The notes below the pieces were generated by a model. That model had not been told where the DNA came from and ran no database searches. It saw only the letters and a list, made by a program, of their open reading frames with translations. A DNA stretch of 64,000 nucleotides from Macrostomum lignano (taxonomy: Eukaryota): NCBI GenBank assembly GCA_002269645.1, contig NIVC01001822.1, positions 1 to 64,000 on the forward strand. Reading direction: 5' to 3'. Of this stretch, positions 4,291 to 63,960 are shown piece after piece. Each line of letters opens with the position of its first letter. The first letter of the stretch is position 1. Both the position numbers and the translations under genes were made by a program.

Positions 4291-4304
4291 TAAGTGAATT
4301 TATA

Positions 4305-4535: not shown

Positions 4536-4612
4536 AAATTAATCACAGCTGCTTCTATAGAAAGTGAACTACATCAGCGCGTCGTCTTGCACTTCTCACA
4601 GACTTCGTCAGC

Positions 4613-29312: not shown

Positions 29313-29712
29313 GATGTCAAGGCCTACTGGGGGAATCGCTAAGATGTCAAGGCTTACTTGTGGAATCGCTAAGATGTCAAGGCTTGTTTGGGGAATCGCT
29401 AAGATGTCAAGGCTTACTTGTGGAACCGCTAAGATGTCAAGGCTTGTTTGGGGAATCGCTAAGATGTCAAGGCTTACTTGTGGAATCGCTAAGATGTCAA
29501 GGCTTACTTGTGGAATCGGTAAGATGTCAAGGCTTACTTGTGGAATCGCTAAGATGTCAAGGCTTACTTGTGGAATTGCTAAGATGTCAAGGCTTACTTG
29601 TGGAATTGCTAAGATGTCAAGGCTTACTTGGGGAATTGCTAAGATGTCAAGGCTTACTTGGGGAATTGCTAAGATGTCGAGGCTTACTGGGGGAATTGCT
29701 TAGGTGTCAAGG
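29313..29712. repeat. 30-bp minisatellite (AAGATGTCAAGGCTTACTTGTGGAATCGCT)n, about 13 copies
   Basis: Directly visible units. Confidence 0.95.
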
Positions 29713-30496
29713 CAAATAGGATAGTTTTCCTAATTTAAAATAATTTGTCCCTTGCCTATTGGGCACCCCGAGGGGGGGGCACTAGATTGGTAGCCACAAC
29801 TGACTTATTTTTAAAAAGCATGTTCTTGAGTTTATGAAGCATTCATAAGTCAGTAGAATCCAGCTTACAGACTGCACCCAGCAAAATAACACAAAATAGT
29901 TTAACAAATCCTGTTAAATTTTTCTACTGCCATTATAAAGTAAAAAACATTGCCTTGCAACCAGAAATCAGGGCAAGACTAATAAATGTATTTGATTGTA
30001 TTTTAACAAAAAGTTGAAATTAAATTTGCGATTCGTGCTACTATTGACAAGCGCTGAGATAGCACGTGCACATATTGAAATATACAAGCAACAAAAATTA
30101 CACAAAGTAGTCTTCTTGATAAAAATAGTTCATAGCTAACTATTGTTGACATCATTAACATGATGAATAAGACAATACATACACCAGCTACAAATTAATT
30201 TATTTGAGAAATACAACAGATACTATTCCCCGAAAGTAATAAGCGATTGCACAACAAACAAGACTATTTTTATTAATTTAATACTTGGAATACTAGCATA
30301 ATAATGAAGATTAGCGTACAAGTTCAAGCTGCTAATCTAGCTTTAGCTTGCACTAAACTGTACAGAATGTTTATAGGGTTACATGAGAGCACAAATACAA
30401 ATCAAGCAGACGTGCAAAGGTAATATTTAAAGTCGCAGTTATGCACAATTTCAGATGTACTAAAAACAAAACAGCTGCAAAAATGCCGGCTACTAA

Positions 30497-42775: not shown

Positions 42776-45394
42776 AATAACTGCAAGGACAGTGAAAATA
42801 AAATTAGTCATATTTTTCGATGGTACTGCACTATTTTTGTGAAGCACATTTTTTATTAACTTTTGTGTTTCTTCTACCAACTTTGGCAGTTTTACAACTT
42901 TACAGTTAGTACTTCTTAAACTTTCTACTTATTCCAGGCAAATATACCTATTTTATTCAAGAAAATTATGCTCGCTTTTGACGGCTTCTACATGCCCAAC
43001 AGCTTATACATTGCTTTTTATCTGACATGATAAAGCTAGAAGTCAATAATCACAATTAAAAAAAATTATGAAAAAATAACAAGGACAAAATACTACTGAT
43101 GATAAAAATCAAATGATGGGAGCTCAAACTGCAAATGCAAGTACATGCAAACAGGTTAATTTTGTGATTTAATGATTTAAAGTTATTTATTGATTTATAA
43201 TGATTTAATACTGAATTCTAGATGCCTTAAAAAGAATTTTCATTGATAAGCAGGATTTTGAGTGACTATAAAACTGTGAACCATTTTAGTTGTTTATTTC
43301 AAATATGTACAAAAAGTATCGCTTTAAAATGAAGCTACCTAAAAGCTGAGATAGTTCTTACATTTAAAAACTACATGTTTTGGCTGCTAAAATTGAGGAT
43401 AGAGAAACAAAAAGTAATGCTTCTTTACAGATTTTTCTAACTTTATTTTTTATTAGAATAATGCAATTAAAATTTTGCTAATATATATATTAGTATAACT
43501 ATCAAACATAATTCGTGTTCAATGTGTCTTTTACTATGAAAGTTTCAAGATAGAATTTAAAAGATGTATTAAATAAAAATATCTATTCTTTATAAATAGC
43601 AAGACACACAAGCCAAGGACTAAACAGTAATTAGTAGTATAGTTGCACACCTATCGCTTAGATCTTTAATTTTTTTGGTTATTAATACCCTTTAAATAGT
43701 AGAAATGAAAAGAAAGCTAATTTCGAGATTGAGGCAAAAACTGAGAATGCGCACTTCCATGTTGCTAGCCGCGTCTCAGTCGCATCAAAATTTTAAACTC
43801 ATGCCCCAGATGCGGCTGTAGTAAAATCTTATAGATTATGGTCTGAAAGTTATGTCCCAAAAGATTTCGCGCGATAATTCGATAGTTCATTTATGTACAA
43901 GTGAATGCTCGCGCTTGTAAAATAAAAATTATAGACTGAGCATGCAGCGCGCGATAACATACGTATGAAACATTCGCCGACACTTATTCAGACACTTCTA
44001 CAGACACTTTAGTTTCTGTCGTACGGTTAGGAACAAGCATTAAATTTGTCTAGGACACTTCCTAATTCATATTTAATGAAATAAAGCAGTCCATGCATAG
44101 TTTTAATTTTGAAATTTTGTTTTTGTGCACTCGTTCCAGACTTTCAAATTATGGCTTTTATCGCGTAGCGTGCACATGCATCGTGTACAACGATTAGCTG
44201 CAGTGTGCTAAATAGTTCACTGAGGTATTAAAAGCGTACAAGGAGACGAACCTCAAGTATTTGTACATTTTAGTTGAAGTTAAAAGTTCAAGCTTTTAGT
44301 GAATCATTGGAAAATAAAACTATCCGTTTTAAATCGTGCAACATATTGTTTTGTCTCGGACATTTGTGACACTGTCACTTAGGGTTGCAAGGTTTTTAAA
44401 AAGAGAAACTGTTGCTTTTCCAATGCTGAAGTATTTGTGTTGTATGGATCAGGGTTTTTCGTCAAAATTTGGATGCATGTATACATCTAAACATGTATAT
44501 GCAGATGGAAATATAATAATCAAGATGCCATATGTACATTTGCCAACATTTTCAGATTTTGTATAAAAATGATCAAGGTTGAGGATTACCCTATGGTATA
44601 ACTGTTTTCTCCATTTTACTATTTCAAAGTGCCCACGTGAAGTTAGATTTAGCATGCCAGCCTTAAAAAATAAAAAAATCTACATAGTGTATAATTGTAT
44701 ACTCTTTTATTTAAGGCTATATTATATTCCCAATATATTTGCTTAGATAAATCAAAAAGTATTTACTTTACTTGAAAAAAATAATGTTCACTACAAATAT
44801 TTCAATATAGAAACCAGGAAACATAAACCTATTAAGTCTTATATAGAAATGAAGGATAAAGATATGGATAGAATATAATAAAACCATTGTGGGCATTAAA
44901 TATAAAACAAAAGAATCACTTAAGGCAAAATTTGAAAAAAGTGAATTTTTGGCATGCTCCAAGAAAAGAGGCTTATAATTTGAAATATTTTTGCTTTTGT
45001 TTGACAAAAAATATGTGTAGATTTATACTTTTGGGCAAGGTTTATTTTCTCTTAAAATTCTAATTGTAAATTTGCCAGTAAGCTTAAAAATTGTTGTAAG
45101 TTGAAGCTCAAATAAAATTAGTCTTAACTCCAATCTGACTTTCCAAAGTAAATCCCTAAATTATTTGTTACAATTGCTTTTAAAAACTTGCCATTTCATT
45201 CATTCATTAATCAAAATTTTGTTCTAGAAACTGATACCTATAGAAGGTTTATAGTTTTTAAGAAATCTAGTAACTAGTGTCAGAGAAATATGTTTATATA
45301 GGTTTTATATATATCAACCTTATATATAAAAAAGGTTTCACACTGAGATTTAAATACAGCTTCTAACATGTGTGTCCAGAGGTGAGATTATGGC

Positions 45395-46680
45395 CAACTG
45401 CACACCAATAGCATACCAACTCCATACTGACATGCCAACTGTATACCAACTGTATACCAACTGTATACAAACACCATATCAACTCCATACCAATATGCCA
45501 ACTGCATACCAACTCCATACCAACTGCATACCAACTCCATACCAACATGCCAACTGCATACCAACTCCATACCAACTGTATGCCAACTGCATACCAACTG
45601 CATACCAACTCTATACCAACTATATACCAACATGCCAACTGCATACCAACTGCATACCAACTCCATACCAACTACATACCAACATGCCAACTGCATACCA
45701 ACTGCATACCAACTATATTCCAACATGCCAACTGCATACCAACTACATACCAACATATCAACTCCATACCAACTGCATACCAACTCCATACCAATATGCC
45801 AACTGCATACCAACTCCATACCAATATGCCAATTGCATACCAACTCCATACCAATATGCCAATTGCATACCAACTCCATACCAACTGCATACCAACTCCA
45901 TACCAACACCATACCAACTGTATGCCAACTGCATACCAACTCCATACCAACATGCCAACTGTATACCAACTGCATACCAACTCCATACCAACATGCCAAC
46001 TGCATACCAACTGTATGCCAACTGCATACCAACTGTATGCCAACTGTATGCCAACTCCATACCAACTGTATGCCAACTGCATACCAACTCCATACCAACA
46101 TGCCAACTGCATACCAACTGCATACCAACTGCATGCCAACTGCATACCAACTACATACCAACTATATACCAACATGCCAACTGCATACCAACTGCATACC
46201 AACTCCATACCAACTATATTCCAACATGCCAACTGCATACCAACTGCATACCAACTCCATACGACCATACCAACTATATTCCAACATGCCAACTGTATAC
46301 CAACACCATACCAACTGTATGCCAACTGCATACCAACTCCATACCAACATGCCAACTGCATACAAACTACATACCAACTGCATGCCAACTGCATACCAAC
46401 TCTATACCAACTATATACCAACATGCCAACTGCATACCAACTGCATACCAACTCCATACCAACATGCCAACTGCATACCAACTGTATGCCAACTGCATAC
46501 CAACTGTATGCCAACTGTATGCCAACTCCATACCAACTGTATACCAACTCCATACCAACATGCCAACACCATACCAACTCCATACCAACATGCCAACTGC
46601 ATACCAACTCCATACCAACTGCATGCCAACTGCATACCAACTCCATACCAACATACCAACTACATACCAACATGCCAACT
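45395..46680. repeat. Inner tandem domain of the left foldback arm (11-bp CCAACTSYATR and 8-bp CCAACATG modules)
   Basis: About 1.3 kb of mixed modules; the inverted counterpart is at 53425-53712. Confidence 0.95.
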
Positions 46681-46749
46681 TATATTATGCCACACTAAAC
46701 GAAAACATGGCAAATTCATACCATTGTTTCATGTTTCAGGCTTCTTTGC

Positions 46750-49086
46750 ATGGCAGCGAAGAAAAGTGTGTACGACACTTCTGAAGCCATTAGCGGTGAC
46801 CAGTCAGGTGCTGCTGGTGCACAAGTTTTTTCTGCTGGAGGTGTTTTTTTGGAATCATGCATATCAACTAATCTCTTCGTGAATCACTTTGATACAAGAA
46901 CTTGTAAACTTAAGCCTTCTTGGTTTGATGAAGTCATTTATCTACTGTTAAGACAGCATGGTGAGTATTGTCAGTTCTCAGTTAATAAGGTTAGACTGCG
47001 TGCATTTAAGCGCCATCGGAAGGACTGCAGTTTTCTTTGGATGCGCCTAGTCTGTGCCGAAGGCTCTGGTTGCAGTATGGCATTCGTCGTCACCTTAAAC
47101 AAGGCGCCGACTGATGGGCAGTCCTCTACACTGACGCTACGAAGAATCTCAGAGCACTCGAGGAATGATGTTCCATCAAGTTGTTCCTCTTATCGCTATC
47201 TGTGGCAACGAGGTTCACAAGAGTGCCGTAACTTTGTTTTATCTCAGGCCAACAACGCTGCTGCCAAGCCAACGCAGATCTATGTGAAAGCAATCGAGCT
47301 GTTTGGTAGCGAAGCATGCTCTCTATCTGCTGTCCGTACAACTGTTAGTCGGACAAAAGCTGCCGACGACAAGTCTCCAGACGACATAAGAGATTTAAGA
47401 CTCCAAATGAAAGACTGGAAGTTGACTATAAACGAGGATGGAGTCATTAGCGGCTATATCCAAAAGATTGACGTTGCACCAGTTGGTGTGATTCTCCATA
47501 CCTCCATGCAGTTGGATTTGCTTCGCGACGTGCTGAAAGGCAATCAGCTTGCTCCTCTCCACTTAGACGCCACCGGCGGAATTGTGCGACAGACCCAGAA
47601 CGTGCCGAGCACTGTACTTCTGTGCAGTGCTGTTGTTGCAACCCCGGATATAAAGAGAACAGCTGTATCAGAAAGCATCATGGAGGTCACGCGCTCGGAA
47701 AATGTGTCCAGTTGGCTAATGCATTTTTTAGCAGATTTCGCTCGTCACTGCAACATAGGACTGTGGGAACTACCCAAGAAAGGTCCGCAAATCTACGTGT
47801 CTGACTTTAGCTGGGTTTTCATTCATGTTATTCTCCGAGCCGCATGTACGACCTGTGTTACAGACTACCTGCGTGTACAGTACAATCGACTTCGGAGTGC
47901 TGATCTGAAGCCACCTGAATCTCCTGTTGTGTTTATCTGTAGCTCGCATTTGCTGCGCGCTGTTGCCAGGACTTTGAAGTCACCAGATAAAATCGATAAG
48001 GTTACTTATCGCGAGTTCATGCTCTCTTTTGCACTATTAGTGACGTCGAAAACTTTGCGTTGCGCCCAAGCTGTTTGGAAGGCAATGGTCGAGGTGTTTA
48101 CCTCCAGGCGAGTAGGTCCTGCCACTTTGAAGGCTTTACAAATTCTACATGGTAGGTTCGACTTCAGTTCGTTGGAGATTCCTGATGAAAACCAAGTGGC
48201 TGAAGATTCTGCTAATGTCTCAAATGCAGTGCAAGAAGACGTCGCATTGGCTGAATTGGAGACTGGACTACGAGCCTCATCACCTTTTGCGAAGTACTTC
48301 AACGATTTGACAAGCGAAGTGACAGCAAGCGATGGCAATGGCGTGCTGAACAATCTTTTCTACCCTCAGGCTGTTCAGGTTGTATTGCGAAAGTGGATGT
48401 CACTGTTTCCTCTTTGGAGTGTGGCAGTGTTTGGAGGAAATCGTAGCGCACACGTGACCAACGCCGCTGTTGAATCATGGTTCAGCTGGGGCAAAAGCGA
48501 AGCACTGCCTTCTCCAAGTTCTCGGCTCAGGTTACCAAGATTTGTCCGTGCGCAACTAACAACCGTAAAACTGCAACTGAAGCGGTTGCAGCACGAGCAA
48601 CATCCAATTCGCCCCCCGAAGCGTGCTAGAGGACGCAAATGTGGCTTTGATGCTCCGTTAAACCCACCTGGAGATCCCTGGAAAAGGTCCAGAGCCTCAA
48701 AAAGACAAAGAACCAGCTTCATTCAATCGGCATTATCAATTCCGCCAGCCGTTGCACCCACGACCTGTACTCTAGCTGCGCCTGCTGCAAGTGGGTCTCG
48801 CTCGGGCAGCCAGCCCGTCATTGTCCAGGTTCGGCCTGCTATTGCACGCACGACCTGTACTCTAGCTGCGCCTGCTGCAAGTGGGTCTCGCTCGGGCATT
48901 TCACCTGCACCAACAGCACAGAATACCACCTGTCACAGCCTACCAGATGAGCAAATTGTGAGTGATGAAATTGCATTTTTTCAGTTTAGAAATACCTTCA
49001 GTCAACCCTTGTATTGGTTTACGTATTGTGTATGCGCCGTACACTCACTCCGCCACAATTTGCGTCTCCCACTAGATCTGTCGTAG
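46750..49086 (+). CDS. NOF/MULE-type DDE transposase, 778-aa uninterrupted ORF (probably the first exon of a longer gene)
   Basis: LHLDATGG (D at 47566), VSDFSW (D at 47803), ICSSH (CxxH, 47938) and TNAAVESWF (E at 48472). N-terminal C..GC...H zinc-finger-like segment. Located inside the TIRs. Confidence 0.85.
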   Translation: MAAKKSVYDTSEAISGDQSGAAGAQVFSAGGVFLESCISTNLFVNHFDTRTCKLKPSWFDEVIYLLLRQHGEYCQFSVNKVRLRAFKRHRKDCSFLWMRLVCAEGSGCSMAFVVTLNKAPTDGQSSTLTLRRISEHSRNDVPSSCSSYRYLWQRGSQECRNFVLSQANNAAAKPTQIYVKAIELFGSEACSLSAVRTTVSRTKAADDKSPDDIRDLRLQMKDWKLTINEDGVISGYIQKIDVAPVGVILHTSMQLDLLRDVLKGNQLAPLHLDATGGIVRQTQNVPSTVLLCSAVVATPDIKRTAVSESIMEVTRSENVSSWLMHFLADFARHCNIGLWELPKKGPQIYVSDFSWVFIHVILRAACTTCVTDYLRVQYNRLRSADLKPPESPVVFICSSHLLRAVARTLKSPDKIDKVTYREFMLSFALLVTSKTLRCAQAVWKAMVEVFTSRRVGPATLKALQILHGRFDFSSLEIPDENQVAEDSANVSNAVQEDVALAELETGLRASSPFAKYFNDLTSEVTASDGNGVLNNLFYPQAVQVVLRKWMSLFPLWSVAVFGGNRSAHVTNAAVESWFSWGKSEALPSPSSRLRLPRFVRAQLTTVKLQLKRLQHEQHPIRPPKRARGRKCGFDAPLNPPGDPWKRSRASKRQRTSFIQSALSIPPAVAPTTCTLAAPAASGSRSGSQPVIVQVRPAIARTTCTLAAPAASGSRSGISPAPTAQNTTCHSLPDEQIVSDEIAFFQFRNTFSQPLYWFTYCVCAVHSLRHNLRLPLDLS

Positions 49087-49493
49087 TAATGTATGTGCCA
49101 TGTCTCAGCAACTTGTGGGTAAGGTGCAACCTTATCAATCAACTCTCTTTGTAGGCCTCCTCCGTCTCGACTGGCACAGGTATTTATATTGCACAATCCA
49201 ACATGTTCCGTATGATGCACGTTTCTGTTACGTGATTGTTCTCTGATTAGAGATCTAAAGTTTATGATTCTATCATTTTTTTGCTTTTCGTGTCACCGAT
49301 TATGCCCTTTTAAGTTTTACTAATTTCCATGAATTAGCATTCAACATGTTGCTTTCCATAAGTATTTGTACTTTTAAGTTTCGTTTCTTTTGCTTACGTC
49401 GAGGCGCCATTTTTTGTTGTTAAATGGATGTGACTGGGCTGTTCACTGGGACATTTTGATGGTAAATTCGTTCCTAACCGCCAATTTTATTAG

Positions 49494-50581
49494 GACGCGC
49501 CGACACTGCAGTGTCATTTCCTGCACTATCGCCACGGTCGCCAGAGGGGCCACCGAATCCGACGGGCACGTATTGTGCTTTCAATGCCGCCAGTCAATGC
49601 TTGGTTGCAACATTAACGAGCGCACTATCGTGTGATGCAGATTCACCACTTGCGCTGTTCCTTAACTGCCTAATGACAGGCAAAGACGTTCTGTTGCTGC
49701 ATTCAGCCGCGTTTCAGTGGTGCAGTAAAGCATTTCATATGGATCCTATGGCACAAAACTGTGCCTTAGAGTTTCTGACCGGAATGCTGTTTCTTTCTGA
49801 GCTCAAACCGCGATTTAGCTGCGAGGTAAGGGTGAACGGTTTATTAAGTTTATGACTATTTAAATGCGTTTTAGTAAAGTGATTTAAGCCTGCATCCTGA
49901 ATCTAAATTTATTTGTAAGTTACCTTCGAAGACAGTATATACTTTGCTGACTTATGGGAAGGCAAAGAATACCTTTCAATCGCGCTTCCACTGTGTGTTG
50001 GTCTTCACAGTTGCACCATGAGTACTGTTCCTATCCATATTTTTTATTTCGTAGATTTCTACAACTTTGAGTTGTTCCGCCTGTTTCAAAGTGACACGAC
50101 TGCTACCTAGAGACACGGCAACTATTCTACGTTTATCAATCCTGATCACGACGACTCGCTTGATTTCCCGGCACTCATTAGACAGTCACTGTTTTCTACT
50201 CAAGACCACACCGACATCTGTTGTCCGACTTGCGACGTCGGGGGGTGCAGCTATGCACAAACACTTGCAACAACGTCGGAGCACATATGCATGGGAATTA
50301 GCCGAGTCTCTGTCAAGCGCAGAAAGGGACAAACTGTACTATTCGAGAAGAACACTAAAGTTGTACCCATCGAGATGAAGCTTACTTTGAGTGGCAGAAG
50401 CTACAAGCTTCGTGCATTCATCGTTCACATTGGTAGTCGCGTGAATAGTGGTCACTATATTGCATACGTATTCTGTGGCCGCACTAGCTACTGTGTCAGT
50501 GATTTGACTGTACAAAAAGTATCTTTGTCAGCGGCATTCAATGACGTGAAGCGAAACTGCTGCGCTCATTTTTACGGCTAA
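49494..50581 (+). CDS. Ubiquitin-specific protease (peptidase C19/USP) domain in two exons (49494-49825, 50055-50581), with one 1-nt frameshift near 50141
   Basis: Cys box GPPNPTGTYCAFNAASQCL, QNCALEFL, zinc-ribbon CSAC...CPTC, His box YKLRAFIVHIGSRVNSGHYIAY, then CVSD. GT-AG intron in phase 0. Confidence 0.8.
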
Positions 50582-51950
50582 CGTGTTGGTGATCTCCGTG
50601 TTATTAACATAATGTGGACGGTTTACTTATTTTCTTGAGTTTATTCGTGTTTGTAATGGTCTCATGCCGTTGAAAGTATAAATTCATAACTGATGATCGT
50701 GCTGTGTAATGTATTGATAACAAAAACTTTTAACTGTGTTGAAAAGGTCTACATATATACATGTACGGATTTGCATTTTATAGTTTACCGCCATTTTATA
50801 ATTCTCTATTTTTCTGTATGCGCTAAAAGCTGGGACTAAACGCCGTTAGTAAACCGTTTGGACAACGTGAGTTCTAAAACTTGTAGTGTCTACTATATAC
50901 TCTTTTCTGGCAGCTAAATACTCTCCATTTGAGTATAATCGTAATTGTTTTTGGCCTGTGAAACCTGTACACCTGTCACTTATCACTTAGGCCAATAAAT
51001 GTCACAAAAAAAATTGTTCCAATCAACGAAATACGTGCCATGAAACATTCCTTTGCTTTATTTATCCGAAAGAATTTATTTTAACACAAGGACTGACAAC
51101 TAATACGAGTAAAGGAAATAAAACTGTTCAAATATAAGTATAAACTACAATTAATCGTTCAAGGAAGCATAGATTAAAAACCACATAAGGTACTTGTCTC
51201 ATAGTTACTACTACGCTGAAGTCATTCAACTACATACTTTGTTGCAATGAAAATTGTTGCATGGTACAATAGATAAGCCAATAAGCTATACGAACGGTAT
51301 GACTTTGTTTAATGCTCGAATACCAGCGTTCTTATTTTCGTGCAAAAGAAGCTGGACAAACTGTTATTCAACACGCATCCGATATTCCGTCACGCATCAT
51401 CCTAGTATGTTACTCATGTGTGATAAATAAAGGCAATTAGATAAATAGCATGCACGGTGAGCAATTATTTAGGCCCTAGACAAACCTACTTGGAGCGTTC
51501 GGAGATTTTAAAGCTATTGGCCCTAATTGCCTATCGCCGGTCGGCGAGTCCTACCAGTCTTTCTCCAATAGCCGCAGGTACAGTACAAGAAAAGAAAGAA
51601 CACGAGGGAACACGAACCGAAAGATTTAGGGAGTGATAATCCTATAAGAATAGCTAATAAGCAATTGACTTGACGGTTTAATTTGACACATTCAATAGTT
51701 ACAAGATTCAAATTCAAAGCGGCGCAGATAACTAGAGTTGACAAAACGACGATAACGGTTAACAATAATAATTAGATTACGCAACTGGCAAGCAGATCTC
51801 AGCTGAGAAGAAGAGGAAGAGGAACCGAACACGACCACGGAGAAGACTCCTAACCCCTGGCCTAAACCAGAACCTACTCTCAAACAAGAGCACTGCCGAA
51901 TCGACTGTTCAACGGAGCACTGACTAAATTCTATAAGCGCTGCCCTTCAG

Positions 51951-52432
51951 TGTGACACTGAGGCCCTCGGGTCGAGGCCGCGTACTTGATCAGATCCGAC
52001 AGTCTCTATCTAAACCGCGCTTGATAGCGACGACGTCAGACAAGGATGCCGAATCGTTACGCTACAAGACTAAAGCGGTTGGGCGGGGAACAAAGGTATG
52101 GACCGGGGGTGACGAATTCAAAACGCCTCAAAGCGCGAACCAAAGGGAAACAGGCCACCGGCCGGGAAGCTGGACAAAACCAAGAACCGGGAAAAGAAGG
52201 CGAGATCCGATTGCCAAATACACTTTCATATATAGTCAGAGTCAAACCCTCACACCCCCCCTCAAGCCGGGTGGTGGTCGTCTGGCCGGCCGCTTGCTTA
52301 AGCCGATTTGCACTGTGCCCGCGGCGCCGGGTAGAACTGGAACTTGCCGCGTGCCAGGGTCCAGGCCGGTTCTGATTGGCTGACCGCGCAAAGCTGGGGT
52401 TCGCAGAAAACTCAACCCTCCGCTGAGTCACA
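51951..52432 (-). mobile_element. LTR-like segment (solo LTR candidate), 482 bp, inside the foldback element
   Basis: TG...CA ends with a 6-bp inverted repeat TGTGAC/GTCACA and a TATA-like TATATATGAAAG on the minus strand. No TSD, PBS or PPT was recognised. Confidence 0.45.
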
Positions 52433-52596
52433 AATTTGGCGTCTAACTCTAACCTGTTTACAATTTTAGATTCTAACTAACAAGAGAAAAGTACATCAAA
52501 AACGCATGACTAACTAAAGCAAAATAATAATTCAATAACAATATAGAAACTAATACAATCAATTAACTAACAAAATACACGCAAAAGATGCTCACA

Positions 52597-53355
52597 CTAC
52601 ACATGCCTCGTTCGCGAGCGCAATGACATCGCTGGTTGGACCGACCTTGAAGATCTCTGGGGCTTCTGCGATCTCCGACGCATTGGTTTTAGTGGTCCAA
52701 GAGCGGGACACTCGTACTGTTGGGACTGCCGCTGTTCATCCAGCTCGAGCTGCCGCGGCTCCTCCTGCAGTGCGAGTTGCCGTTGGCCGTCCTGTATCTG
52801 CGGATGCCGCTGTTCATCCAGCTCGAGATGCCGCTGCTCGTCTTGCAGCGCGTGCTGCCGCTGCTCCTCATCAGTTGGGCGTGATCGCCGCTGCATGAAA
52901 CGCCGACGGTGCACAGTCGATTGTAGCTGACTGAAGCCGCGCGAGACAACGAGCAGAGAACGAAGAACAGACACATCACATGAAGAAATAAGGAGCCGAA
53001 AGCTCTGCAAAACTTGCTTCCGCAGTCGCTTTGAACTTTGAAAATGGTGACCCGGAATCTCTCGACGTAGGACAACTGACTGCGTCAGATGTGGCTTAGT
53101 TACACGCTGCAGCCAAGCAATGCCATTACCACGGTGGCCTTTGTTTCCACAACCATACACACCGTGCAAAAATGCAACCTTGCTAGGATCGGCTATTAAT
53201 TGGACAACAGACACTCGATCACGTCCGCACCTACGAAATCCGTCTCCGCACCTACACAAGGCAGAACAGCATCCGGTGGGCCTTGTAATAACTGGTCCTA
53301 GAATATGGAAGAGTGCGATTTTAGTCATCAAAAGAGTCAGGAAAGATGGCAACAT
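52597..53355 (-). CDS. Second, convergent ORF of the foldback element (unknown function, about 250 aa)
   Basis: Starts just inside the right arm. Hydrophobic N-terminus, CCSALCRC..C cluster, Q/E/R-rich 11-aa repeats (QRQ.ALQDE) and a basic C-terminus. Confidence 0.35.
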   Translation of the reverse strand: MLPSFLTLLMTKIALFHILGPVITRPTGCCSALCRCGDGFRRCGRDRVSVVQLIADPSKVAFLHGVYGCGNKGHRGNGIAWLQRVTKPHLTQSVVLRREIPGHHFQSSKRLRKQVLQSFRLLISSCDVSVLRSLLVVSRGFSQLQSTVHRRRFMQRRSRPTDEEQRQHALQDEQRHLELDEQRHPQIQDGQRQLALQEEPRQLELDEQRQSQQYECPALGPLKPMRRRSQKPQRSSRSVQPAMSLRSRTRHV

Positions 53356-53424
53356 GGCAGAAGTATCCCAAGAGTTGTACAAAAAGAGAACCTAAAAGTT
53401 CCTACGAGTCTCGCAATTTAACAT

Positions 53425-53712
53425 TCTTGGTATGGAGTTGGTATGGTGTTGGTATACAGTTGGTATAGTTGGTATGTAGTTGGTATGCAGTTGGTATGCA
53501 GTTGGTATGCAGTTGGCATACAGTTGGTATGGAGTTGGTATGCAGTTGGCATGTTGGTATGGAGTTGGTATGGTGTTGGCATGTTGGTATGGAGTTGGTA
53601 TGCAGTTGGCATATTGGTATGGAGTTGATATGGTGTTTGTATACAGTTGGTATACAGTTGGTATACAGTTGGCATGTCAGTATGGAGTTGGTATGCTATT
53701 GGTGTGCAGTTG
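53425..53712. repeat. Inner tandem domain of the right foldback arm
   Basis: Reverse complement of the 45395-46680 modules, but only about 290 bp long. Confidence 0.93.
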
Positions 53713-56700
53713 GCCATAATCTCACCTCTGGACACACATGTTAGAAGCTGTATTTAAATCTCAGTGTGAAACCTTTTTTATATATAAGGTTGATATATAT
53801 AAAACCTATATAAACATATTTCTCTGACACTAGTTACTAGATTTCTTAAAAACTATAAACCTTCTATAGGTATCAGTTTCTAGAACAAAATTTTGATTAA
53901 TGAATGAATGAAATGGCAAGTTTTTAAAAGCAATTGTAACAAATAATTTAGGGATTTACTTTGGAAAGTCAGATTGGAGTTAAGACTAATTTTATTTGAG
54001 CTTCAACTTACAACAATTTTTAAGCTTACTGGCAAATTTACAATTAGAATTTTAAGAGAAAATAAACCTTGCCCAAAAGTATAAATCTACACATATTTTT
54101 TGTCAAACAAAAGCAAAAATATTTCAAATTATAAGCCTCTTTTCTTGGAGCATGCCAAAAATTCACTTTTTTCAAATTTTGCCTTAAGTGATTCTTTTGT
54201 TTTATATTTAATGCCCACAATGGTTTTATTATATTCTATCCATATCTTTATCCTTCATTTCTATATAAGACTTAATAGGTTTATGTTTCCTGGTTTCTAC
54301 ATTGAAATATTTGTAGTGAACATTATTTTTTTCAAGTAAAGTAAATACTTTTTGATTTATCTAAGCAAATATATTGGGAATATAATATAGCCTTAAATAA
54401 AAGAGTATACAATTATACACTATGTAGATTTTTTTTATTTTTTAAGGCTGGCATGCTAAATCTAACTTCACGTGGGCACTTTGAAATAGTAAAATGGAGA
54501 AAACAGTTATACCATAGGGTAATCCTCAACCTTGATCATTTTTATACAAAATCTGAAAATGTTGGCAAATGTACATATGGCATCTTGATTATTATATTTC
54601 CATCTGCATATACATGTTTAGATGTATACATGCATCCAAATTTTGACGAAAAACCCTGATCCATACAACACAAATACTTCAGCATTGGAAAAGCAACAGT
54701 TTCTCTTTTTAAAAACCTTGCAACCCTAAGTGACAGTGTCACAAATGTCCGAGACAAAACAATATGTTGCACGATTTAAAACGGATAGTTTTATTTTCCA
54801 ATGATTCACTAAAAGCTTGAACTTTTAACTTCAACTAAAATGTACAAATACTTGAGGTTCGTCTCCTTGTACGCTTTTAATACCTCAGTGAACTATTTAG
54901 CACACTGCAGCTAATCGTTGTACACGATGCATGTGCACGCTACGCGATAAAAGCCATAATTTGAAAGTCTGGAACGAGTGCACAAAAACAAAATTTCAAA
55001 ATTAAAACTATGCATGGACTGCTTTATTTCATTAAATATGAATTAGGAAGTGTCCTAGACAAATTTAATGCTTGTTCCTAACCGTACGACAGAAACTAAA
55101 GTGTCTGTAGAAGTGTCTGAATAAGTGTCGGCGAATGTTTCATACGTGATAACATTCAAATCTATTACTTTTTTATGCTGCGTTTCATTTATGTGTGTAC
55201 AGAAGTTCAGCCTAATATTTTAACTTCAAACTTTGAAATTAATTTACAGTTAGCTAAGTTTAACAGCCATTTTTTCAACTTTTTTGATCGTGCTTTGTTA
55301 AAGTGCAATGAATTCAAACGCCAGTTTAACTTGGAAGCGATCTTTACTCTCATTCCTAGATAAACCTTGAATATTCACAGTTTAACTTGGAATTTAACCA
55401 GGAATCGGCTTCAATTTTTTAAGCGGGGAGTGGTGTGCAAATCATTAGACTTAGACCGATTTTGTGATCAACATTTACATCAAATTTTGTCCTTTTGTGT
55501 TACATTGGTCGTGTGATTTGATGGCTCGTTTGATGACAGGGTGATTGGGCCTTGCCTTTAGGCTTAAGCGTGGCAAAACATTAAATTATCATGCAGTAGC
55601 AGATTCGAGATAGGGAGGTGCAACAGGCCCCAGGGCAGCTGGCAGCATAGGATGTGTGCCCTCTGATTTCTATCTATTTCTGCTCTTAGTTTTAAATCAT
55701 TTCCATGCTCAAAATGGCCTTCTTTACAAATTTTGTTTAACCAATTAAGCTGTTCTAATTTAGATTTTGCCTCTGAGTCTGATTATGAATTGATGATTTA
55801 TTTTTCTATTGTCTTTTGTTTGTAGCCTTGCTCTTAAGAATTCTTTTTCTTTTGATAGCTAACTGCTTCAGCAGTTGTAGCATTTTCCTAGTTATCTCTA
55901 TAATTGTTTCCTTCATTGAATTTGGTTGATTGTAAAGAATAAAAAGTATAGGCCTATCTTTTATGAGTAATTTGAACTTTTTCAGCTTCTCATGTAAACA
56001 AATATATGAATTTGGCAATATAATGATTTTGCTTCTATACAAGCATGCATATAAAAGTTTTAAAAGTGCTATTTGAGGTTTTCAATTTTAGAAAAATGCT
56101 AAAATAATTGAAGAAAAAAATTTGATACATTCAAAATTCATAAAAAAGTTGAGTATAAGGAAAAAAAAACTTTCATTTCTTTTGCATTCTTATTATTCAG
56201 ATACAGGGTTATATATACCATTACCATGAAGTGTATGATAGAAGTAGATAGTGCCCATGATAGATCTTACAGGCCTTTAGGCTATTAATGATATTCACTT
56301 TACACAGAATAAGCCAGCTTGCAAAATTATCTACTTCTTAGTAAAAGAAGTAACTAAAATAATCATAGTAACACAATTGAATAGTCATTATATTTACCTA
56401 TTGCAAATTGAGCTTCAATAGAAATACAATAAGTTGAAACATTTTTTTATTTGCATGAGTACCCCAAATGCAATATCAACTGTCTTTTCATCAATAAGGG
56501 GCATAAATGTGCAACCCACCTGATTTACACTGGCTATCCAACTTCCTTTTTGACCAAAAATGCAGCTTACGTGTGAAAGAAATCCTAAAGCAAATTTTAT
56601 GCACTTTTGGGTTAATAACAGGAGTAACTATGACTGTCTTATTAAGGATAAATGCTTCGTCATCTAATTAGTACTATGTCTTCTTCGGGTAGGCACTTTT

Positions 56701-56918: not shown

Positions 56919-59900
56919 ATGCCATGGCTACAAGAGGAGATTAACGAGAAGAGAACTGCCCGCCTGCACCAGAGCATGAGCCTGCGGGTGCTGCAGGAGT
57001 CGGTGAAGTCTGGCCAGCGCTATGCGACTTACAAGCGAGGCACAAAGGCGGAGCGACTGAAGCGCCTGGAAGAGAAGCACATGGCAGCCCTGTGCGGCGT
57101 GGTTGTGTACAGCGCAGCGAAGCGGAGCGGCCAGGAGTGCGCGGAGGTCGTCAAGCCGGAGAAGGCCGAGGCGGCAGAGTCAGCAGCCGAAGATTCGGTG
57201 GCAGAGTCAGCAGGCGATGAGGCAGCGGCTGTGAAGGCGGAACCAGCAGCGGCGGCCTCTGAAGCAGCGGACGAGACGGCACCAGCTGATGACGGCAGGC
57301 GGAGGTCGAAGAAGCCGCGCCGATTCATCGACGAAGAGGAGAGCGGCGGGGAGCGTCGAAAGCAGCCGCAGCAGCAGCAGCAGCCGGTGATGGCGGAGGA
57401 GGCGTCACGGCAGCAAAAGAAGAAGGCGGGCAAACAGAAGCGCCGATCGACCAGCGAGGGAGCAGCCGGCAGTGGCGGCGCCTCATCAGCAGAGAAAAAG
57501 CAGCGACGGCGAAAGCGGAAGAGCGACGCTCTGCCTGAGGCGGCGGCAGTGAAGGAAGAGCAGCTGGCGGGTGATGAGGCGGCAGGGAAGCTGGAGACTG
57601 CAGCGGTGGCAGAGCCGAAGCGAAAGGCAAAGATGAAGATTGCGGACTCGAGTGTTGAGGAGGCAGAGGGCGGATCGATTTACTGCAGCGTGTGTGGATG
57701 CGCAGCTCTGCTGATCTCGCTGCAGGGCAAGATTGACATCTGCAAGACCTGCTACACGGCCTTCACTGCTAGTCTTCGCTCAGCCAGTCAGCAGAGCGAT
57801 TTGGAGTGCGACTGCGGAGGCTGTGCCAAGTGCAGGGCTGTTGCTGTGCTCAAATCGGGCATCGATCTGTCTGTCTACTCAGTTGCTAAGGGCTTTCCCA
57901 GCTGGGTGAGTCGCTACGGAGAGCGACCAAAGCCTCAGGCTGATTCTGCTGAATCAGGTGGCAAGAAAGCTGTAAAGATAAAGAGGCCATCAGTTGAAGC
58001 AGCTCAGCGAATGGGCTCTCTGTATGACTCGGTGAGTCGGGGCCAACTGCGGCAGTGCGTGCAGGCAGTGACTGGAGACACGGGATCCGTGGCAGTGGAT
58101 GTGCCGCAGGAGATGTCGAACAGAGAAGAGGCTTGGCGTGATGGAGTAGCCGTATTCGGTCGGAAGGGATCTGTGCCCGATATAAGCCAGCCGCAGTGCT
58201 TATTGTGCGGTAGCGGTGGTGCAGAGCAGGATCTGATGCTGAGATGCAGCTGCTGTACTGAGCAGTTTCACCTGTACTGCCTGTCTGTATGCGAGCGGCC
58301 TCTGTGGTCCGGCCTGACACCTTGGCGATGCGCCCGTTGCCTTGTGTGCCGAGTGTGCAAGCGGTCTGGGACAGCGTGTCGCAGCTGCATCAAGTGCGGG
58401 GCTGCCTACCATCCAGACTGTCTTGAAGAGAGTCGAGGGTACAGCGTGAAGGACTGGCAGCTGTGCTGCGACTGTGCAGCCTGTAAGCACTGCGGCAAAG
58501 TATTCAGCGATGACTGGTCAGACTGGGACAACTTGTGCCAGCACTGCGAGAGCACGGAGGTGACTTGCCACGAGTGCCATCGGGTCACCTCTCTGATTGG
58601 CAATTCATTGGCGTGCTCCACCCCAGACTGCAAGAATGTGGTGCACGCCACCTGCGCTGGCATCAATGACGAGCTGTACCACGTGTACCTGGTGAACGAG
58701 CAGCTGGACTTTTTCTGTCGGGACTGCGACTCTCGGGGCTTCCACGCTCTGAAGGCCGCCTGCGTGAAGGACCTCCGAGCCAGGATCCGCGCCCTGAGCG
58801 AGAGCCTCGGACTGCCGTCTCGGCCTCAGCAGCTGGACGGCGTCCTGGACGACATTGATGAGGCCAGGCATGAGGCTGCGGCTGAGAAGATCTTCTGCAG
58901 GATGCCTCCGTACCAGGAGTTCAGCTCGGGACACGACCTGGTCAAAGCCATCATCATTGAGCTCATCGAGGCCTGCAAGGTAAGCTGAGAAGGGGAACCA
59001 TTCTTTGTTACTGCCAGACGCAGACCCTAGGCAGAAGCCTTCCTTTTCTGCTCCTAGTAGTAGATCCTCAGCAAACCATTGCACTTCCAAAAGCAAGGCA
59101 GTCTTCTTCCCCTAGCTGAGCGAATCGCTCTTCAGGTTCAGGGGCAGATTCAGAGTAATCCTGGGCTACCAGAAGCATTCTGTAGTACTGCTAGAAGCAG
59201 ACCGTGACCAGAAGCCCTCCTTTTCTGCTTCTAGCAGTAGATCCTCATCAGACCATTGCACTCCCAAAAGCACCCCCGCCTATTAATAAGTGAAGTAGAG
59301 AGCTTTAGCTTCCCGATTTAGGCACTGAAGCTTTACGAGTGGCAATTCTAAGTCTCGAGCCTCTTCCTGCGGAAGCCTTCTTAGTAACTCTTTAGTAGCG
59401 TCGGTAGTGCTGCCACCAGTCCGTCTGGTCTCGTCTCCGCCTTAGGTGAGGTGAGCTTCTGTCGGGACGAAAGAAACAAGTCGAGCGAACACAGCACAAT
59501 GTGCAGATTTGCAGCTTACGAACAATGCGTCTCGTCAGTAGATCGTGCTTTTGGGGTTGGCATCAGATGGGTCTCAGACCAATAGCAGTGAATTGAACGT
59601 ACACTCAAACAGAGAATCATAGAGAACGATGAACAACTGGAATGATGAATCAATCCCTGACAGAAACAAGGGTGAAGGGGGGGTCCAATATTCATAGCGC
59701 TGGATTCTCCACTGCCCCAACGCACAAGACCTCGTGACTTTGTTCTATTTTTAGAACTGACGTCACTCTGGGTCTCCGGGCAGAGTGCACTATACTGTGA
59801 CGCAGTGTCTATTTTTAGAAACATGAGTCACTCCTTTCCTTAGAGAAGGGAAGAGCCTTAGGCACGTGACTCTCACATAAACAGGGACCAACAGTAAACA

Positions 59901-62823: not shown

Positions 62824-63960
62824 TTGAGTAGCTTTTGAGCTGACTGGGGTATTTTGGTTGAGTAGGATGGAGTGACTCAGCTGAGTGAGTAGCTTTTGAG
62901 TAGACTGGGGTGTTTTGGTTGAGTAGGATTGAGTGACTCAGCTGAGTGAGTAGCTTTTGAGCTGACTAGAGTGTTTTGGTTGAGTGACTCAGCTGAGTGA
63001 GTAGCTTTTGAGCTGACTGGGGTGTTTTGGTTGAGTAGGATTGAGTGACTCAGCTGAGTGAGTAGCTTTTGAGCTGACTGGGGTGTTTTGGTTGAGTAGG
63101 ATTGAGTGACTCAGCTGAGTGAGTAGCTTTTGAGCTGACTGGGGTGTTTCGGTTGAGTAGGATTGAGTGACTCAGCTGAGTGAGTAGCTTTTGAGCTGAC
63201 TGGGGTGTTTCGGTTGAGTAGGATTGAGTGACTCAGCTGAGTGAGTAGCTTTTGAGCTGACTGGGGTGTTTCGGTTGAGTAGGATTGAGTGACTCAGCTG
63301 AGTGAGTAGCTTTTGAGCTGACTGGGGTGTTTCGGTTGAGTAGGATTGAGTGACTCAGCTGAGTGAGTAGCTTTTGAGCTGACTGGGGTGTTTCGGTTGA
63401 GTAGGATTGAGTGACTCAGCTGAGTGAGTAGCTTTTGAGCTGACTGGGGTGTTTCGGTTGAGTAGGATTGAGTGACTCAGCTGAGTGAGTAGCTTTTGAG
63501 CTGACTGGGGTGTTTCGGTTGAGTAGAACTGAGTGACTCAGCTGAGTGAGTAGCTTTTGAGCTGACTGGGTATTTCGGTTGAGTAGGATTGAGTGACTCA
63601 GCTGATTGAGTAGCTTTTGAGCTGACTGGGGTGTTTTGGTTGAGTAGGATTGAGTGACTCAGCTGATTGAGTAGCTTTTGAGCTGACTGGGTGTTTCGGT
63701 TGAGTAGGATTGAGTGACTCAGCTGAGTGAGTAGCTTTTGAGCTGACTGGGGTGTTTTGGTTGAGTAGGATTGAGTGACTCAGCTGAGTGAGTAGCTTTT
63801 GAGCTGACTGGGTATTTCGGTTGAGTAGGATTGAGTGACTCAGCTGAGTGAGTAGCTTTTGAGCTGACTGGGTATTTCGGTTGAGTAGGATTGAGTGGCT
63901 CAGCTGAGTGAGTAGTAGTTTTGGTTGTTTTTGGTTGAGTAGGGCTTAATGACTCAGCTG
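62820..63960. repeat. 61-bp tandem array, about 18 copies, inverted counterpart of 30497-32318
   Basis: Reverse-complement units start at the trx copy 2 stop codon. Confidence 0.96.

What the first reader, a model, noticed from the sequence alone, without database searches (positions are those of the whole stretch)
43961..55147. Young foldback (NOF-like) Mutator transposon carrying a USP-family deubiquitinase domain
Seen in the sequence: 8-bp TSD, ~1.43-kb arms in which I spotted only one substitution and one homopolymer indel, and an uninterrupted D/D/CxxH/E transposase ORF. Downstream on the same strand is a complete USP catalytic core: Cys 49574, QxxxxEF, two CxxC, GHY His 50453 and a following SD. 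Established knowledge: Mutator, Ginger, Zisupton and Helitron elements are known to carry Ulp1 (C48) or OTU proteases; I do not recall a C19/USP cargo being a recognised feature of NOF-type elements. Inference: the element supplies its own deubiquitinase, either to stabilise the transposase or to remove repressive ubiquitin marks such as H2Aub. That would be an anti-silencing module.
Basis: partly seen in the sequence, partly recalled or inferred. Interest (0 to 1): 0.9.

Follow-up and report, generated by a model that had tools for sequence, protein, structure and literature searches.

The report
Foldback Mutator-type transposon carrying a deubiquitinase
This is a real, recently inserted 11.2-kb flatworm DNA transposon of the Mutator kind whose transposase gene is followed by, and probably spliced onto, a ubiquitin-specific protease domain; relatives in other animals carry USP, Ulp1 or OTU proteases in the same place, although in this particular copy the protease reading frame is broken by one missing base.

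Summary
The element (43961-55147) has an 8-bp TSD (GATAACAT). Its arms are 1,564 bp (not 1.43 kb), differing by one A/G substitution and one A7/A8 indel, and continue into asymmetric 11-bp arrays (~118 vs ~27 copies). The 778-aa ORF has family-conserved D273/D352/C397-H400/E575. Its AlphaFold model matches the IS256-family ISCth4 transposase best, plus a WRKY DNA-binding domain, which supports Mutator-superfamily placement. "NOF-like" could not be tested.

The USP motifs sit at the stated coordinates and pass Pfam UCH. In this copy, however, a 1-bp deletion at 50139/50140 breaks the frame. Paralog L001 in Macrostomum lignano is intact (285 aa, 38.3 bits). Three independent insertions (TSDs of 8, 9 and 8 bp) all carry the USP, and no close host USP exists, so a recent one-off capture is excluded.

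The USP exon has no ATG before its Cys box. Phase-1 donors in the transposase 3' repeats join it in frame, as one database gene model does. Related transposases carry USP (three pass the Pfam threshold), Ulp1 or OTU tails.

UCH domains were already reported in Helentrons, so this is a new variant of a known theme. Deubiquitinase activity and the anti-silencing role remain untested.

The parts
43953..43960 (.). Left target-site duplication, GATAACAT
   Evidence: Read directly from the sequence.
43961..45524 (+). Left terminal inverted repeat arm (unique part, 1,564 bp). The terminus reads ACGTATGAAACATTCGCC...
   Evidence: the repeat finder I1/I2 and the global alignment show one substitution and one A7/A8 indel against the right arm.
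45394..46680 (+). Left sub-terminal array of about 118-122 copies of an 11-bp unit (CCAACTGCATA). It ends about 70 bp before the transposase ATG and may hold multiple transposase-binding sites (inference).
   Evidence: TRF and the repeat finder D1.
46750..49086 (+). Transposase ORF, 778 aa if unspliced. It has a WRKY-like N-terminal domain (about aa 33-134, with C102 and C108). Catalytic residues are D273 (47566), D352 (47803), C397/H400 (47938/47947) and E575 (48472). The C-terminus is basic and disordered.
   Evidence: It is 96% identical to M. lignano PAA protein P0001 and has 558 relatives at E<=1e-3.
48740..48898 (+). Two 90-bp coding repeats in the transposase 3' end. Each holds a phase-1 splice donor CAA|GTGGGT (exon ends at 48790 and 48880) that joins in frame to the USP exon. 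L001 has three more repeat units.
   Evidence: the repeat finder D5; donor positions and in-frame fusion translation; database model P0003 shows exactly this junction, '...LAAPAA|RRADTAVSF...'.
48958..49493 (+). Intron of the annotated model. The donor is ATT|GTGAGT (phase 0, exon end 48957) and the acceptor is ttttattag|GAC (exon start 49494). With this donor the product ends in a 40-aa out-of-frame tail (stop at 49614) and has no USP.
   Evidence: Sequence and the P0001 C-terminus.
49494..49825 (+). USP exon A. It holds the Cys box GPPNPTGTYCAFNAASQCL (Cys codon 49574) and the QNCALEF box, and ends at the donor GAG|GTAAGG. There is no ATG upstream of the Cys box within the exon.
50055..50581 (+). 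USP exon B, after the acceptor cgtag|ATT. It holds CSAC (50073), CPTC (50222), the His box YKLRAFIVHIGSRVNSGHY (His 50453), Asp 50501 and stop TAA 50579. This copy lacks one T at 50139/50140 relative to L001/L002, which shifts frame 0 to frame 2. As it stands, the read-through stops at 50376.
   Evidence: Pfam UCH scores E 3e-7 for the ORF piece, 2.3e-8 for the joined product and 1.5e-9 (38.3 bits) for the intact L001 version.
51419..52597 (.). About 1.18 kb present only in this copy and absent from L001 and L002. It is unidentified: no RNA family, no Pfam hit, no other copy in the window.
52727..52890 (.). A 27-bp (78-bp higher-order) minisatellite just before the right arm. Its copy number differs between copies. 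The open minus-strand frame 52597-53382 is probably a by-product of this repeat.
   Evidence: the repeat finder D4 and the tblastn comparison with L001/L002.
53427..53713 (-). Right sub-terminal array of about 27 copies of the same 11-bp unit, in reverse complement.
   Evidence: TRF.
53583..55147 (-). Right terminal inverted repeat arm.
55148..55155 (.). Right target-site duplication, GATAACAT

Best explanation
This is an autonomous-type cut-and-paste DNA transposon of the Mutator/IS256 superfamily, in a flatworm (Macrostomum lignano or a very close relative). It has foldback architecture: 1.56-kb near-identical arms that run into arrays of an 11-bp repeat.

It encodes a DDE transposase with a WRKY-type DNA-binding domain. 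Downstream on the same strand is a two-exon, highly diverged USP (peptidase C19) domain. The USP exon has no start codon of its own before the catalytic Cys. I therefore infer that it is made only as a C-terminal fusion to the transposase, through phase-1 splice donors in the transposase 3' repeats. The stronger phase-0 donor would give transposase alone.

The fusion would tether a ubiquitin-removing enzyme to the element's own ends through the transposase's DNA-binding domain. The inferred benefit is one of two things: protecting the transposase from ubiquitin-dependent degradation, or removing ubiquitin marks from chromatin at the element.

Shown here: element structure, mobility, superfamily-level fold, USP profile membership, linkage of the USP to the element in three insertions, and recurrence of protease tails in the family.

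Inferred: the splicing pattern, catalytic activity and biological role.

This particular copy inserted recently, but its USP frame is broken by a 1-bp deletion. If that deletion is real, the protease is not needed in cis.
For: Structure and mobility:
- TIRs and TSD.
- Two further insertions of the same family at unrelated M. lignano loci, with 9-bp and 8-bp TSDs.

Superfamily:
- Conserved D/D/CxxH/E across 46 relatives.
- AlphaFold model with core pLDDT above 90.
- The top five Foldseek PDB hits are all the ISCth4 (IS256 family) transposase (best E 9.5e-5, prob 1.00), plus the AtWRKY18 DNA-binding domain (prob 0.99). No hAT, P, piggyBac or RAG structures appear.
- Foldback Mutator elements with 8-10 bp TSDs are documented (PMC3169594, PMC4079207).

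USP:
- Pfam UCH is above the gathering score.
- All 18 weak PDB sequence hits are USPs.
- The His box of the window copy fits the PROSITE USP_2 pattern as I recall it (checked by eye).
- L001 has an intact two-exon ORF with canonical GT-AG sites.
- The USP region is 97-99% identical in all three copies.
- The only database relative at E<=1e-3 is another copy of the element.

Fusion:
- No ATG precedes the Cys box.
- Phase-1 donors give an in-frame junction, identical to UniProt model P0003.

Family context:
- Relatives carry USP Cys boxes directly after the transposase.
- The clam protein P0037 passes Pfam UCH at 25.9 bits, and its USP exons begin about 660 bp after the transposase ORF.
- The L006 locus has a full-length UCH match at 46.2 bits.
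- Other relatives carry Ulp1, OTU, PHD and YqaJ domains.
Against: - No transcript data. Both gene models (P0001 without USP, P0003 with it) are predictions, and P0003 itself reads through the exon A donor.
- The Cys box is atypical: one extra residue before the Cys, and Ala where USPs have an aromatic residue. The Pfam alignment starts only after it, so the enzyme could be inactive.
- The USP in this copy (1-bp deletion at 50139) and in L002 (1-bp deletion in a G-run at 50240) is frameshifted. Only one of three copies is intact.
- dN/dS between the window and L001 is about 1 for the transposase and 0.7 for the USP, on 28 and 10 changes. No purifying selection is demonstrated.
- The sister family in M. 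lignano (40% identical transposase) has no detectable USP downstream.
- The flatworm USP shows no detectable similarity to the USPs of related transposases, so a shared origin is not shown.
- The link to IS256 rests on structure only, with low TM-scores (0.35). There is no sequence-level match to any Pfam transposase family or PDB transposase.
Confidence: 0.7

Rival explanations
1. The USP is decaying passenger DNA. An ancestor of this flatworm family picked up a host USP fragment (Pack-MULE style), and it has been carried along without function. The motifs persist only because the family is young.
For: - Two of three copies have 1-bp frameshifts in the USP.
- dN/dS is not distinguishable from 1.
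- The Cys box is atypical.
- The sister family lacks a USP.
- Mutator-type elements are known gene capturers (PMC8277862, listed).
Against: - No M. lignano or other protein is close to it. It has diverged beyond phmmer reach of any solved USP, yet L001 keeps a 285-aa open frame across two exons. That frame has intact splice sites, both zinc-ribbon CxxC pairs and the Cys, His and Asp positions. This is unlikely for neutral sequence.
- Both frameshifts are homopolymer-length changes, which could be assembly errors or post-insertion mutations.
- The same position in related transposases holds USP, Ulp1 or OTU domains, which argues for selection on this kind of activity.
Confidence: 0.2
2. The USP is a separate gene of the element and is not fused to the transposase. 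It would be expressed from its own transcript, for example by spliced-leader trans-splicing onto the 49494 acceptor, and would act in trans like the second ORFs of other Mutator elements.
For: - Many MULEs carry a second ORF (PMC6446971).
- The best-consensus donor (48957 GTGAGT) puts the acceptor out of frame with the USP, as in model P0001.
- From my own knowledge, not tested here: M. lignano uses trans-splicing.
Against: - In the USP frame there is no ATG between the acceptor and the catalytic Cys. The first Met lies after the Cys box.
- No in-frame ATG-bearing exon was seen in 49087-49493.
- In relatives the USP Cys box lies in the same ORF as the transposase.
Confidence: 0.08
3. The element is not Mutator-type. 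It would belong to another 8-bp-TSD superfamily such as hAT, P or Zisupton/KDZ, the last of which is known for protease cargo.
For: - The window copy has an 8-bp TSD, typical of hAT, P and Zisupton (PMC12730594).
- The CxxH motif is shared by several superfamilies.
- No Pfam MULE domain is hit.
- Zisupton carries Ulp1 (my own knowledge).
Against: - The TSD is 9 bp in L001, so the length varies as in Mutator.
- No KDZ, CxC, hAT-dimerisation or THAP Pfam domains appear in any of 46 relatives.
- Foldseek returns IS256-family and WRKY structures and no Hermes, P-element or RAG/Transib structures.
Confidence: 0.07

Closest known systems
Foldback-type Mutator elements (Drosophila FB, Phantom subclass, Meloidogyne Tm1)
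   Same: Long composite inverted arms built partly of short tandem repeats, with unequal repeat numbers in the two arms. TSDs are 8-10 bp. The transposase is of the Mutator/IS256 kind with a WRKY-GCM1-fold DNA-binding domain (PMC3169594).
   Different: The N-terminal domain is not recognised as FLYWCH by Pfam, and no Pfam MULE domain is hit. The unique part of the arms is unusually long (1.56 kb). A USP domain is attached. Relatedness to NOF or Phantom proteins was not tested.
Rehavkus (basal or outgroup branch of the Mutator superfamily, described only in Repbase)
   Same: Long TIRs, a minisatellite before the 3' TIR, PHD fingers in the transposase of many relatives (11 of 46), and animal hosts (PMC6446971).
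   Different: Rehavkus is reported with 9-bp TSDs and TIRs of 26-400 bp, from arthropods and annelids. Here the TSDs are 8-9 bp and the arms 1.56 kb or more, in a flatworm, and this protein has no PHD finger. No Rehavkus sequence was available for comparison.
Protease-carrying DNA transposons: Ulp1 (C48) in MULEs, Zisupton and Ginger; OTU in Ginger and Helitrons; VTD deubiquitinases and Pfam UCH in Helentrons
   Same: A ubiquitin or ubiquitin-like deconjugating cysteine protease is encoded inside the element, often in the transposase reading frame (PMC2836005, PMC9741609, PMC11417382). Relatives of this transposase themselves carry Ulp1 and OTU.
   Different: Here the protease is a USP/C19 domain on a cut-and-paste Mutator-type transposase. 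The only USP/UCH report I found is for rolling-circle Helentrons. Only the VTD class has measured enzymatic activity.
IS256-family bacterial transposases (ISCth4, PDB 6xgx)
   Same: Best structural match of the catalytic region. IS256 is the accepted prokaryotic relative of Mutator transposases (cited in PMC3169594).
   Different: About 10% sequence identity and low TM-score. ISCth4 works by copy-out/paste-in and has no WRKY domain or protease.

Membership tests
Mutator (MULE/IS256) superfamily | Target-site duplication of 8-11 bp, usually 9 | tested here: met
   8 bp (window), 9 bp (L001) and 8 bp (L002). The range is as given in PMC6446971.
Mutator (MULE/IS256) superfamily | DDE catalytic triad with a C/DxxH motif between the second D and E | tested here: met
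   D273, D352, C397-x2-H400 and E575 are invariant or at least 90% conserved in 46 relatives. The motif is shared with some other superfamilies, so it is not exclusive.
Mutator (MULE/IS256) superfamily | Transposase homologous to MuDR/IS256 transposases | tested here: inconclusive
   Structure: the top five Foldseek hits are the IS256-family ISCth4 transposase (E 9.5e-5, prob 1.0, TM 0.35). Sequence: no Pfam MULE or Transposase_mut hit and no PDB sequence hit. No MULE reference sequences were at hand for a profile comparison.
Mutator (MULE/IS256) superfamily | WRKY-GCM1-fold (FLYWCH or WRKY-like) N-terminal DNA-binding domain | tested here: met
   The model's N-terminal beta-sheet domain matches the AtWRKY18 DNA-binding domain (prob 0.99, TM 0.63 normalised by target). 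No Pfam FLYWCH hit.
Foldback elements (structural class) | Long inverted arms made in part of short tandem repeats, with variable repeat number | tested here: met
   Arms of 1,564 bp plus 11-bp arrays of about 118 and about 27 copies. Arm and array lengths differ in L001 and L002.
FB-NOF / Phantom | Protein similarity to NOF or Phantom transposases, FLYWCH domain | not testable with these tools
   No NOF or Phantom sequence could be obtained, and the Phantom paper is not held.
Rehavkus | PHD finger in the transposase | tested here: not met
   No PHD hit in the window protein, although 11 of 46 relatives have one.
Rehavkus | Minisatellite before the 3' TIR | tested here: met
   27/78-bp array at 52727-52890 and an 11-bp array at 53427-53713. 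Criterion from PMC6446971.
Rehavkus | Sequence clustering with Repbase Rehavkus transposases | not testable with these tools
   Repbase is not available.
USP / peptidase C19 (Pfam UCH PF00443) | Profile match above the curated threshold | tested here: met
   34.4 bits for the frame-corrected window product and 38.3 bits for intact L001, against a cut-off of 23.9.
USP / peptidase C19 (Pfam UCH PF00443) | Catalytic Cys box, His box and Asp/Asn | tested here: inconclusive
   The His box (GHY) and the following Asp are canonical. The Cys is present in a recognisable but atypical box that the Pfam alignment does not cover. In this copy the frame is broken between the Cys and the His.
USP / peptidase C19 (Pfam UCH PF00443) | Deubiquitinating activity | not testable with these tools
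   Needs an enzyme assay.
Zisupton / KDZ | KDZ transposase and CxC zinc-cluster domains | tested here: not met
   No such Pfam hits in the window protein or in any of 46 relatives.

The most novel reading that the evidence does not exclude
A widespread, so far unnamed clade of animal Mutator-type transposases nearly always ends in a ubiquitin or ubiquitin-like deconjugating protease, and has acquired three unrelated folds (USP, Ulp1, OTU) for this job. Removing ubiquitin or SUMO at the transposon's own chromatin, or from the transposase, would then be a core part of how these elements evade host silencing. In the flatworm family, alternative 5' splice-site choice would switch between plain transposase and a DNA-tethered transposase-USP fusion.
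Probability: 0.25. Interest if true: 0.8.

Novelty: new variant of a known kind. Interest (0 to 1): 0.6.

Why it matters
Transposon-encoded Ulp1, OTU and VTD proteases are known, but their role in transposition is still unexplained. Here one transposase family carries USP, Ulp1 or OTU domains interchangeably at the same C-terminal position. That pattern argues that the shared activity is what selection favours, not any particular fold.

Macrostomum lignano is a transgenic-capable laboratory flatworm with recently active copies of this element. That makes it a tractable system for asking what such a protease does. Candidate roles are transposase stabilisation, removal of H2A/H2B ubiquitin or SUMO-dependent silencing marks, or something else.

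It also shows that a large animal branch of Mutator-like transposases is invisible to current Pfam models.

Tried and rejected
- Pfam on the transposase and 46 relatives gave no transposase family at all.
- phmmer of the transposase against PDB sequences gave noise only. A family profile against PDB hit only SENP/Ulp1 through the relatives' tails.
- The word-indexed protein search found only 2 relatives for the transposase, both as a single sequence and as a profile. The third search was therefore wasted. The exhaustive HMMER search was what revealed the family.
- Foldseek against viral structures found nothing.
- Testing common origin of the USP modules failed. phmmer and jackhmmer of the flatworm USP against all fetched relatives, and BLASTP against the L006 USP, gave no similarity.
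- dN/dS between copies had too few substitutions to say anything.
- The TIR search in the related loci L005 and L006 found no bracketing repeats, and the scaffolds are short.
- Rfam on the whole window found nothing.
- Cluster look-ups gave no organism names for most USP-bearing relatives, which come from metagenome or SRA assemblies.
- The minus-strand 261-aa ORF (52597-53382) was considered as a second gene. I set it aside as a minisatellite by-product with no Pfam hit.
- Zisupton/KDZ was considered because of the 8-bp TSD and protease cargo. I rejected it for lack of KDZ/CxC domains and because of the IS256-like fold.
- I considered whether the near-perfect arms could be an assembly artefact. 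I rejected this because of the exact TSD and because the same architecture appears at two other loci of an independent assembly.

Full report
**What is in the sequence**

Positions 43961-55147 are bounded by an exact 8-bp direct repeat, GATAACAT, at 43953-43960 and 55148-55155. The two ends are inverted copies of each other over 1,564 bp (43961-45524 and 53583-55147). They differ by a single A/G substitution (44807 vs 54300) and one A7/A8 length difference.

Inside the unique arms the repeat continues as arrays of an 11-bp unit (CCAACTGCATA). There are about 118-122 copies on the left (45394-46680) and only about 27 on the right (53427-53713). This is the composite, asymmetric arm structure that defines foldback elements.

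**Host and other copies**

The 778-aa ORF (46750-49086) is 96% identical to a Macrostomum lignano protein. I fetched the two contigs of assembly GCA_002269645.1 that encode that protein (L001, L002). Each holds a full copy of the same family, 12.3-12.9 kb long and 93-99% identical along its length. They sit in different flanking DNA, with a 9-bp TSD (GTACACTGT) and an 8-bp TSD (TTATTAAT) respectively.

There are therefore at least three independent insertions, and TSD length varies between 8 and 9 bp. The arms of the two database copies are 96.3-96.6% alike, against 99.9% in the unique part here. The window copy is therefore probably the youngest. No other fragment of the element occurs elsewhere in the window.

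**The transposase**

No Pfam family matches it or any of 46 relatives in their core. An exhaustive HMMER search found 558 relatives at E<=1e-3.

In an alignment of 46 of them, D352, C397, H400 and E575 are invariant and D273 is at least 90% conserved.

An AlphaFold model built on that alignment is confident over residues ~30-620. Its five best matches among solved structures are all chains of the ISCth4 transposase, best E 9.5e-5 and probability 1.00. A separate match of the N-terminal sheet domain is to the AtWRKY18 DNA-binding domain, probability 0.99. ISCth4 is an IS256-family enzyme, the accepted bacterial kin of Mutator transposases. A WRKY-GCM1-fold DNA-binding domain is the Mutator hallmark (PMC1702500, listed; PMC3169594). 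No hAT, P, piggyBac or RAG/Transib structure appeared.

Together with the 8-9 bp TSDs, this supports Mutator-superfamily placement. The TM-scores are low, however, and there is no sequence-level confirmation, so I rate homology as likely, not proven.

The label "NOF-like" could not be tested. Some features fit the description of Rehavkus, the basal Mutator branch known only from Repbase (PMC6446971). These are PHD fingers in 11 of 46 relatives and a minisatellite (52727-52890) just before the 3' arm. This protein has no PHD finger, though, and no Rehavkus sequence was available.

**The USP**

- Cys codon 49574, in GPPNPTGTYCAFNAASQCL
- QNCALEF
- CSAC (50073) and CPTC (50222)
- the His box YKLRAFIVHIGSRVNSGHY (His 50453)
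- Asp 50501

The exon structure is clear from canonical sites. Exon A runs 49494-49825 (acceptor ttttattag|GAC, donor GAG|GTAAGG). Exon B runs 50055-50581 (acceptor cgtag|ATT, stop TAA at 50579).

In this copy, exon B changes frame. Both L001 and L002 have an extra T at 50139/50140. With that base, L001 encodes an uninterrupted 285-aa domain. Pfam UCH scores are:
- L001 domain: 38.3 bits, E 1.5e-9, against a threshold of 23.9
- frame-corrected window product: 34.4 bits
- longest single ORF piece: 30.7 bits

As the window sequence stands, translation would stop at 50376, before the His box. L002 has its own 1-bp loss in a G-run. Both changes are homopolymer-length differences, so they could be sequencing errors or real mutations.

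The domain is very diverged:
- No solved structure is hit at E<0.01.
- All 18 weak hits up to E=10 are USPs.
- The Pfam alignment begins after the Cys box, which has one extra residue and lacks the usual aromatic after the Cys.

Activity is therefore plausible but not assured.

**Is it cargo or a one-off capture?**

The USP lies inside the arms in all three insertions, at 97-99% identity. A search of 5.8 billion proteins, which includes the M. lignano proteome, found only another copy of the element (P0003) at E<=1e-3. A recent capture of a host USP is therefore excluded.

dN/dS between the window and L001 is uninformative, at 1.1 for the transposase and 0.7 for the USP on 28 and 10 changes. 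The argument for long-term constraint is indirect. The sequence is far from every other USP, yet it keeps an open two-exon frame, its splice sites, both zinc-ribbon pairs and the catalytic positions.

**How it is probably expressed**

In the USP frame there is no ATG between the acceptor and the catalytic Cys. The annotated protein P0001 uses the donor ATT|GTGAGT (exon end 48957, phase 0). That donor lands in the wrong frame and ends after 40 residues.

The two 90-bp repeats at the transposase 3' end each contain a phase-1 donor, CAA|GTGGGT (exon ends 48790 and 48880). Joined to the same acceptor, each gives an in-frame junction ...LAAPAA|RRADTAVSF.... UniProt model A0A1I8HZW9 (P0003) has exactly this junction.

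I therefore infer two products: transposase alone, and a transposase-USP fusion of roughly 970-1,000 aa. Both database models are predictions, and transcript evidence is needed.

**Family context**

Among the relatives, USP Cys boxes follow directly after the transposase in at least nine proteins.
- The clam Mercenaria mercenaria protein XP_053374366.1 passes Pfam UCH at 25.9 bits. Its USP exons start about 660 bp after the transposase ORF.
- A metagenome-derived locus (L006) has a complete multi-exon USP after the transposase that matches the whole UCH model at 46.2 bits.
- Other relatives carry Ulp1/C48 (8 of 46 by Pfam), OTU, YqaJ and PHD domains.
- A frequent WGG...NTCxxDN tail aligns with the SENP/Ulp1 N-terminal motif in a profile search.

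The sister family in M. lignano (40% identity) has no detectable USP downstream. The flatworm USP shows no measurable similarity to the other transposon USPs. What is shown is recurrent association of this transposase family with ubiquitin/ubiquitin-like proteases. Whether it reflects inheritance or repeated capture is open.

**Comparison with the literature**

- Foldback Mutator elements with 8-10 bp TSDs are known (Tm1, PMC3169594; Tetris, PMC4079207).
- Ulp1 and OTU cargo are known in several superfamilies (PMC2836005).
- Active VTD deubiquitinases are carried by Helentrons (PMC9741609).
- The Pfam UCH domain was listed among domains stably carried by Helentron-type elements (PMC11417382).

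Several full-text searches found no report of a USP domain in a Mutator-type element. That is absence from the held library, not proof of absence. I therefore class this as a new variant of a known kind.

**Mechanism**

The best-supported reading is a cut-and-paste Mutator-type element whose transposase can carry a C-terminal deubiquitinase.

Shown: mobility, architecture, fold-level classification, USP family membership and linkage.

Inferred:
- the fusion by alternative donor use;
- binding of the WRKY-like domain to the 11-bp arrays, by analogy with multiple transposase sites in Galileo's long arms (PMC3688188, listed);
- a role in protecting the transposase or clearing ubiquitin marks at the element.

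If the frameshift in this young copy is real, the protease is dispensable in cis.

Noticed in passing
window 30489-37681 and 56941-63915: A large inverted duplication brackets the locus. 35525-37681 matches 59096-56941 at 99.3% over 2,157 bp, and 31219-33076 matches 63915-62066 at 96.5%. It includes 61-bp minisatellite arrays (30 and 18 copies) in opposite orientation. The transposon lies in the ~19-kb spacer. This could be a second, giant foldback-type element, a palindromic duplication or an assembly artefact.
   Followed up: partly
window 12427-12598 and 15593-15764: A 172-nt inverted repeat pair, 95% complementary and 3 kb apart. This is a candidate 3.3-kb TIR element.
   Followed up: no
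window 51419-52597: About 1.18 kb inside the element that the two M. lignano paralogs lack. It has no other copy in the window, no RNA-family hit and no recognisable protein. It could be a nested insertion or captured DNA.
   Followed up: partly
window 1-529, 4303-4536, 22270-22876, 23948-24686, 29290-29713, 61298-61853: The window is unusually rich in well-preserved minisatellites with periods of 16-62 bp. One example is 35 copies of a 21-bp unit at 97% identity.
   Followed up: no
relatives P0030, P0032, P0034, P0046, P0048, P0050, P0051, P0064, P0065, P0069, P0079, P0109 and others (C-termini): A recurrent C-terminal module, 'WGG...NTCxxDN...', followed by Cys-rich motifs has no Pfam hit. 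In a family-profile search it aligns with the N-terminal WLNDxxIN motif of SENP1/Ulp1. It is possibly an unrecognised, divergent C48-like protease domain.
   Followed up: partly
relatives P0042, P0067, P0126, P0144: Some transposases of this family carry, in one protein, a PHD finger, a YqaJ-type exonuclease and a Ulp1 protease after the transposase core.
   Followed up: no
window 47149-47160 (transposase aa 134-137): The window copy reads EHSRND where P0001 and the sister family P0004 read EHSGH. A conserved His at the end of the WRKY-like zinc-binding region is replaced, which might weaken DNA binding of this copy's transposase.
   Followed up: no
L003 (Mercenaria mercenaria CM038769.1) 44050-54008: Directly downstream of the clam transposase-USP gene model lies a gene with a Ulp1 (Peptidase_C48) hit, so two protease types occur side by side in that region.
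   Followed up: no
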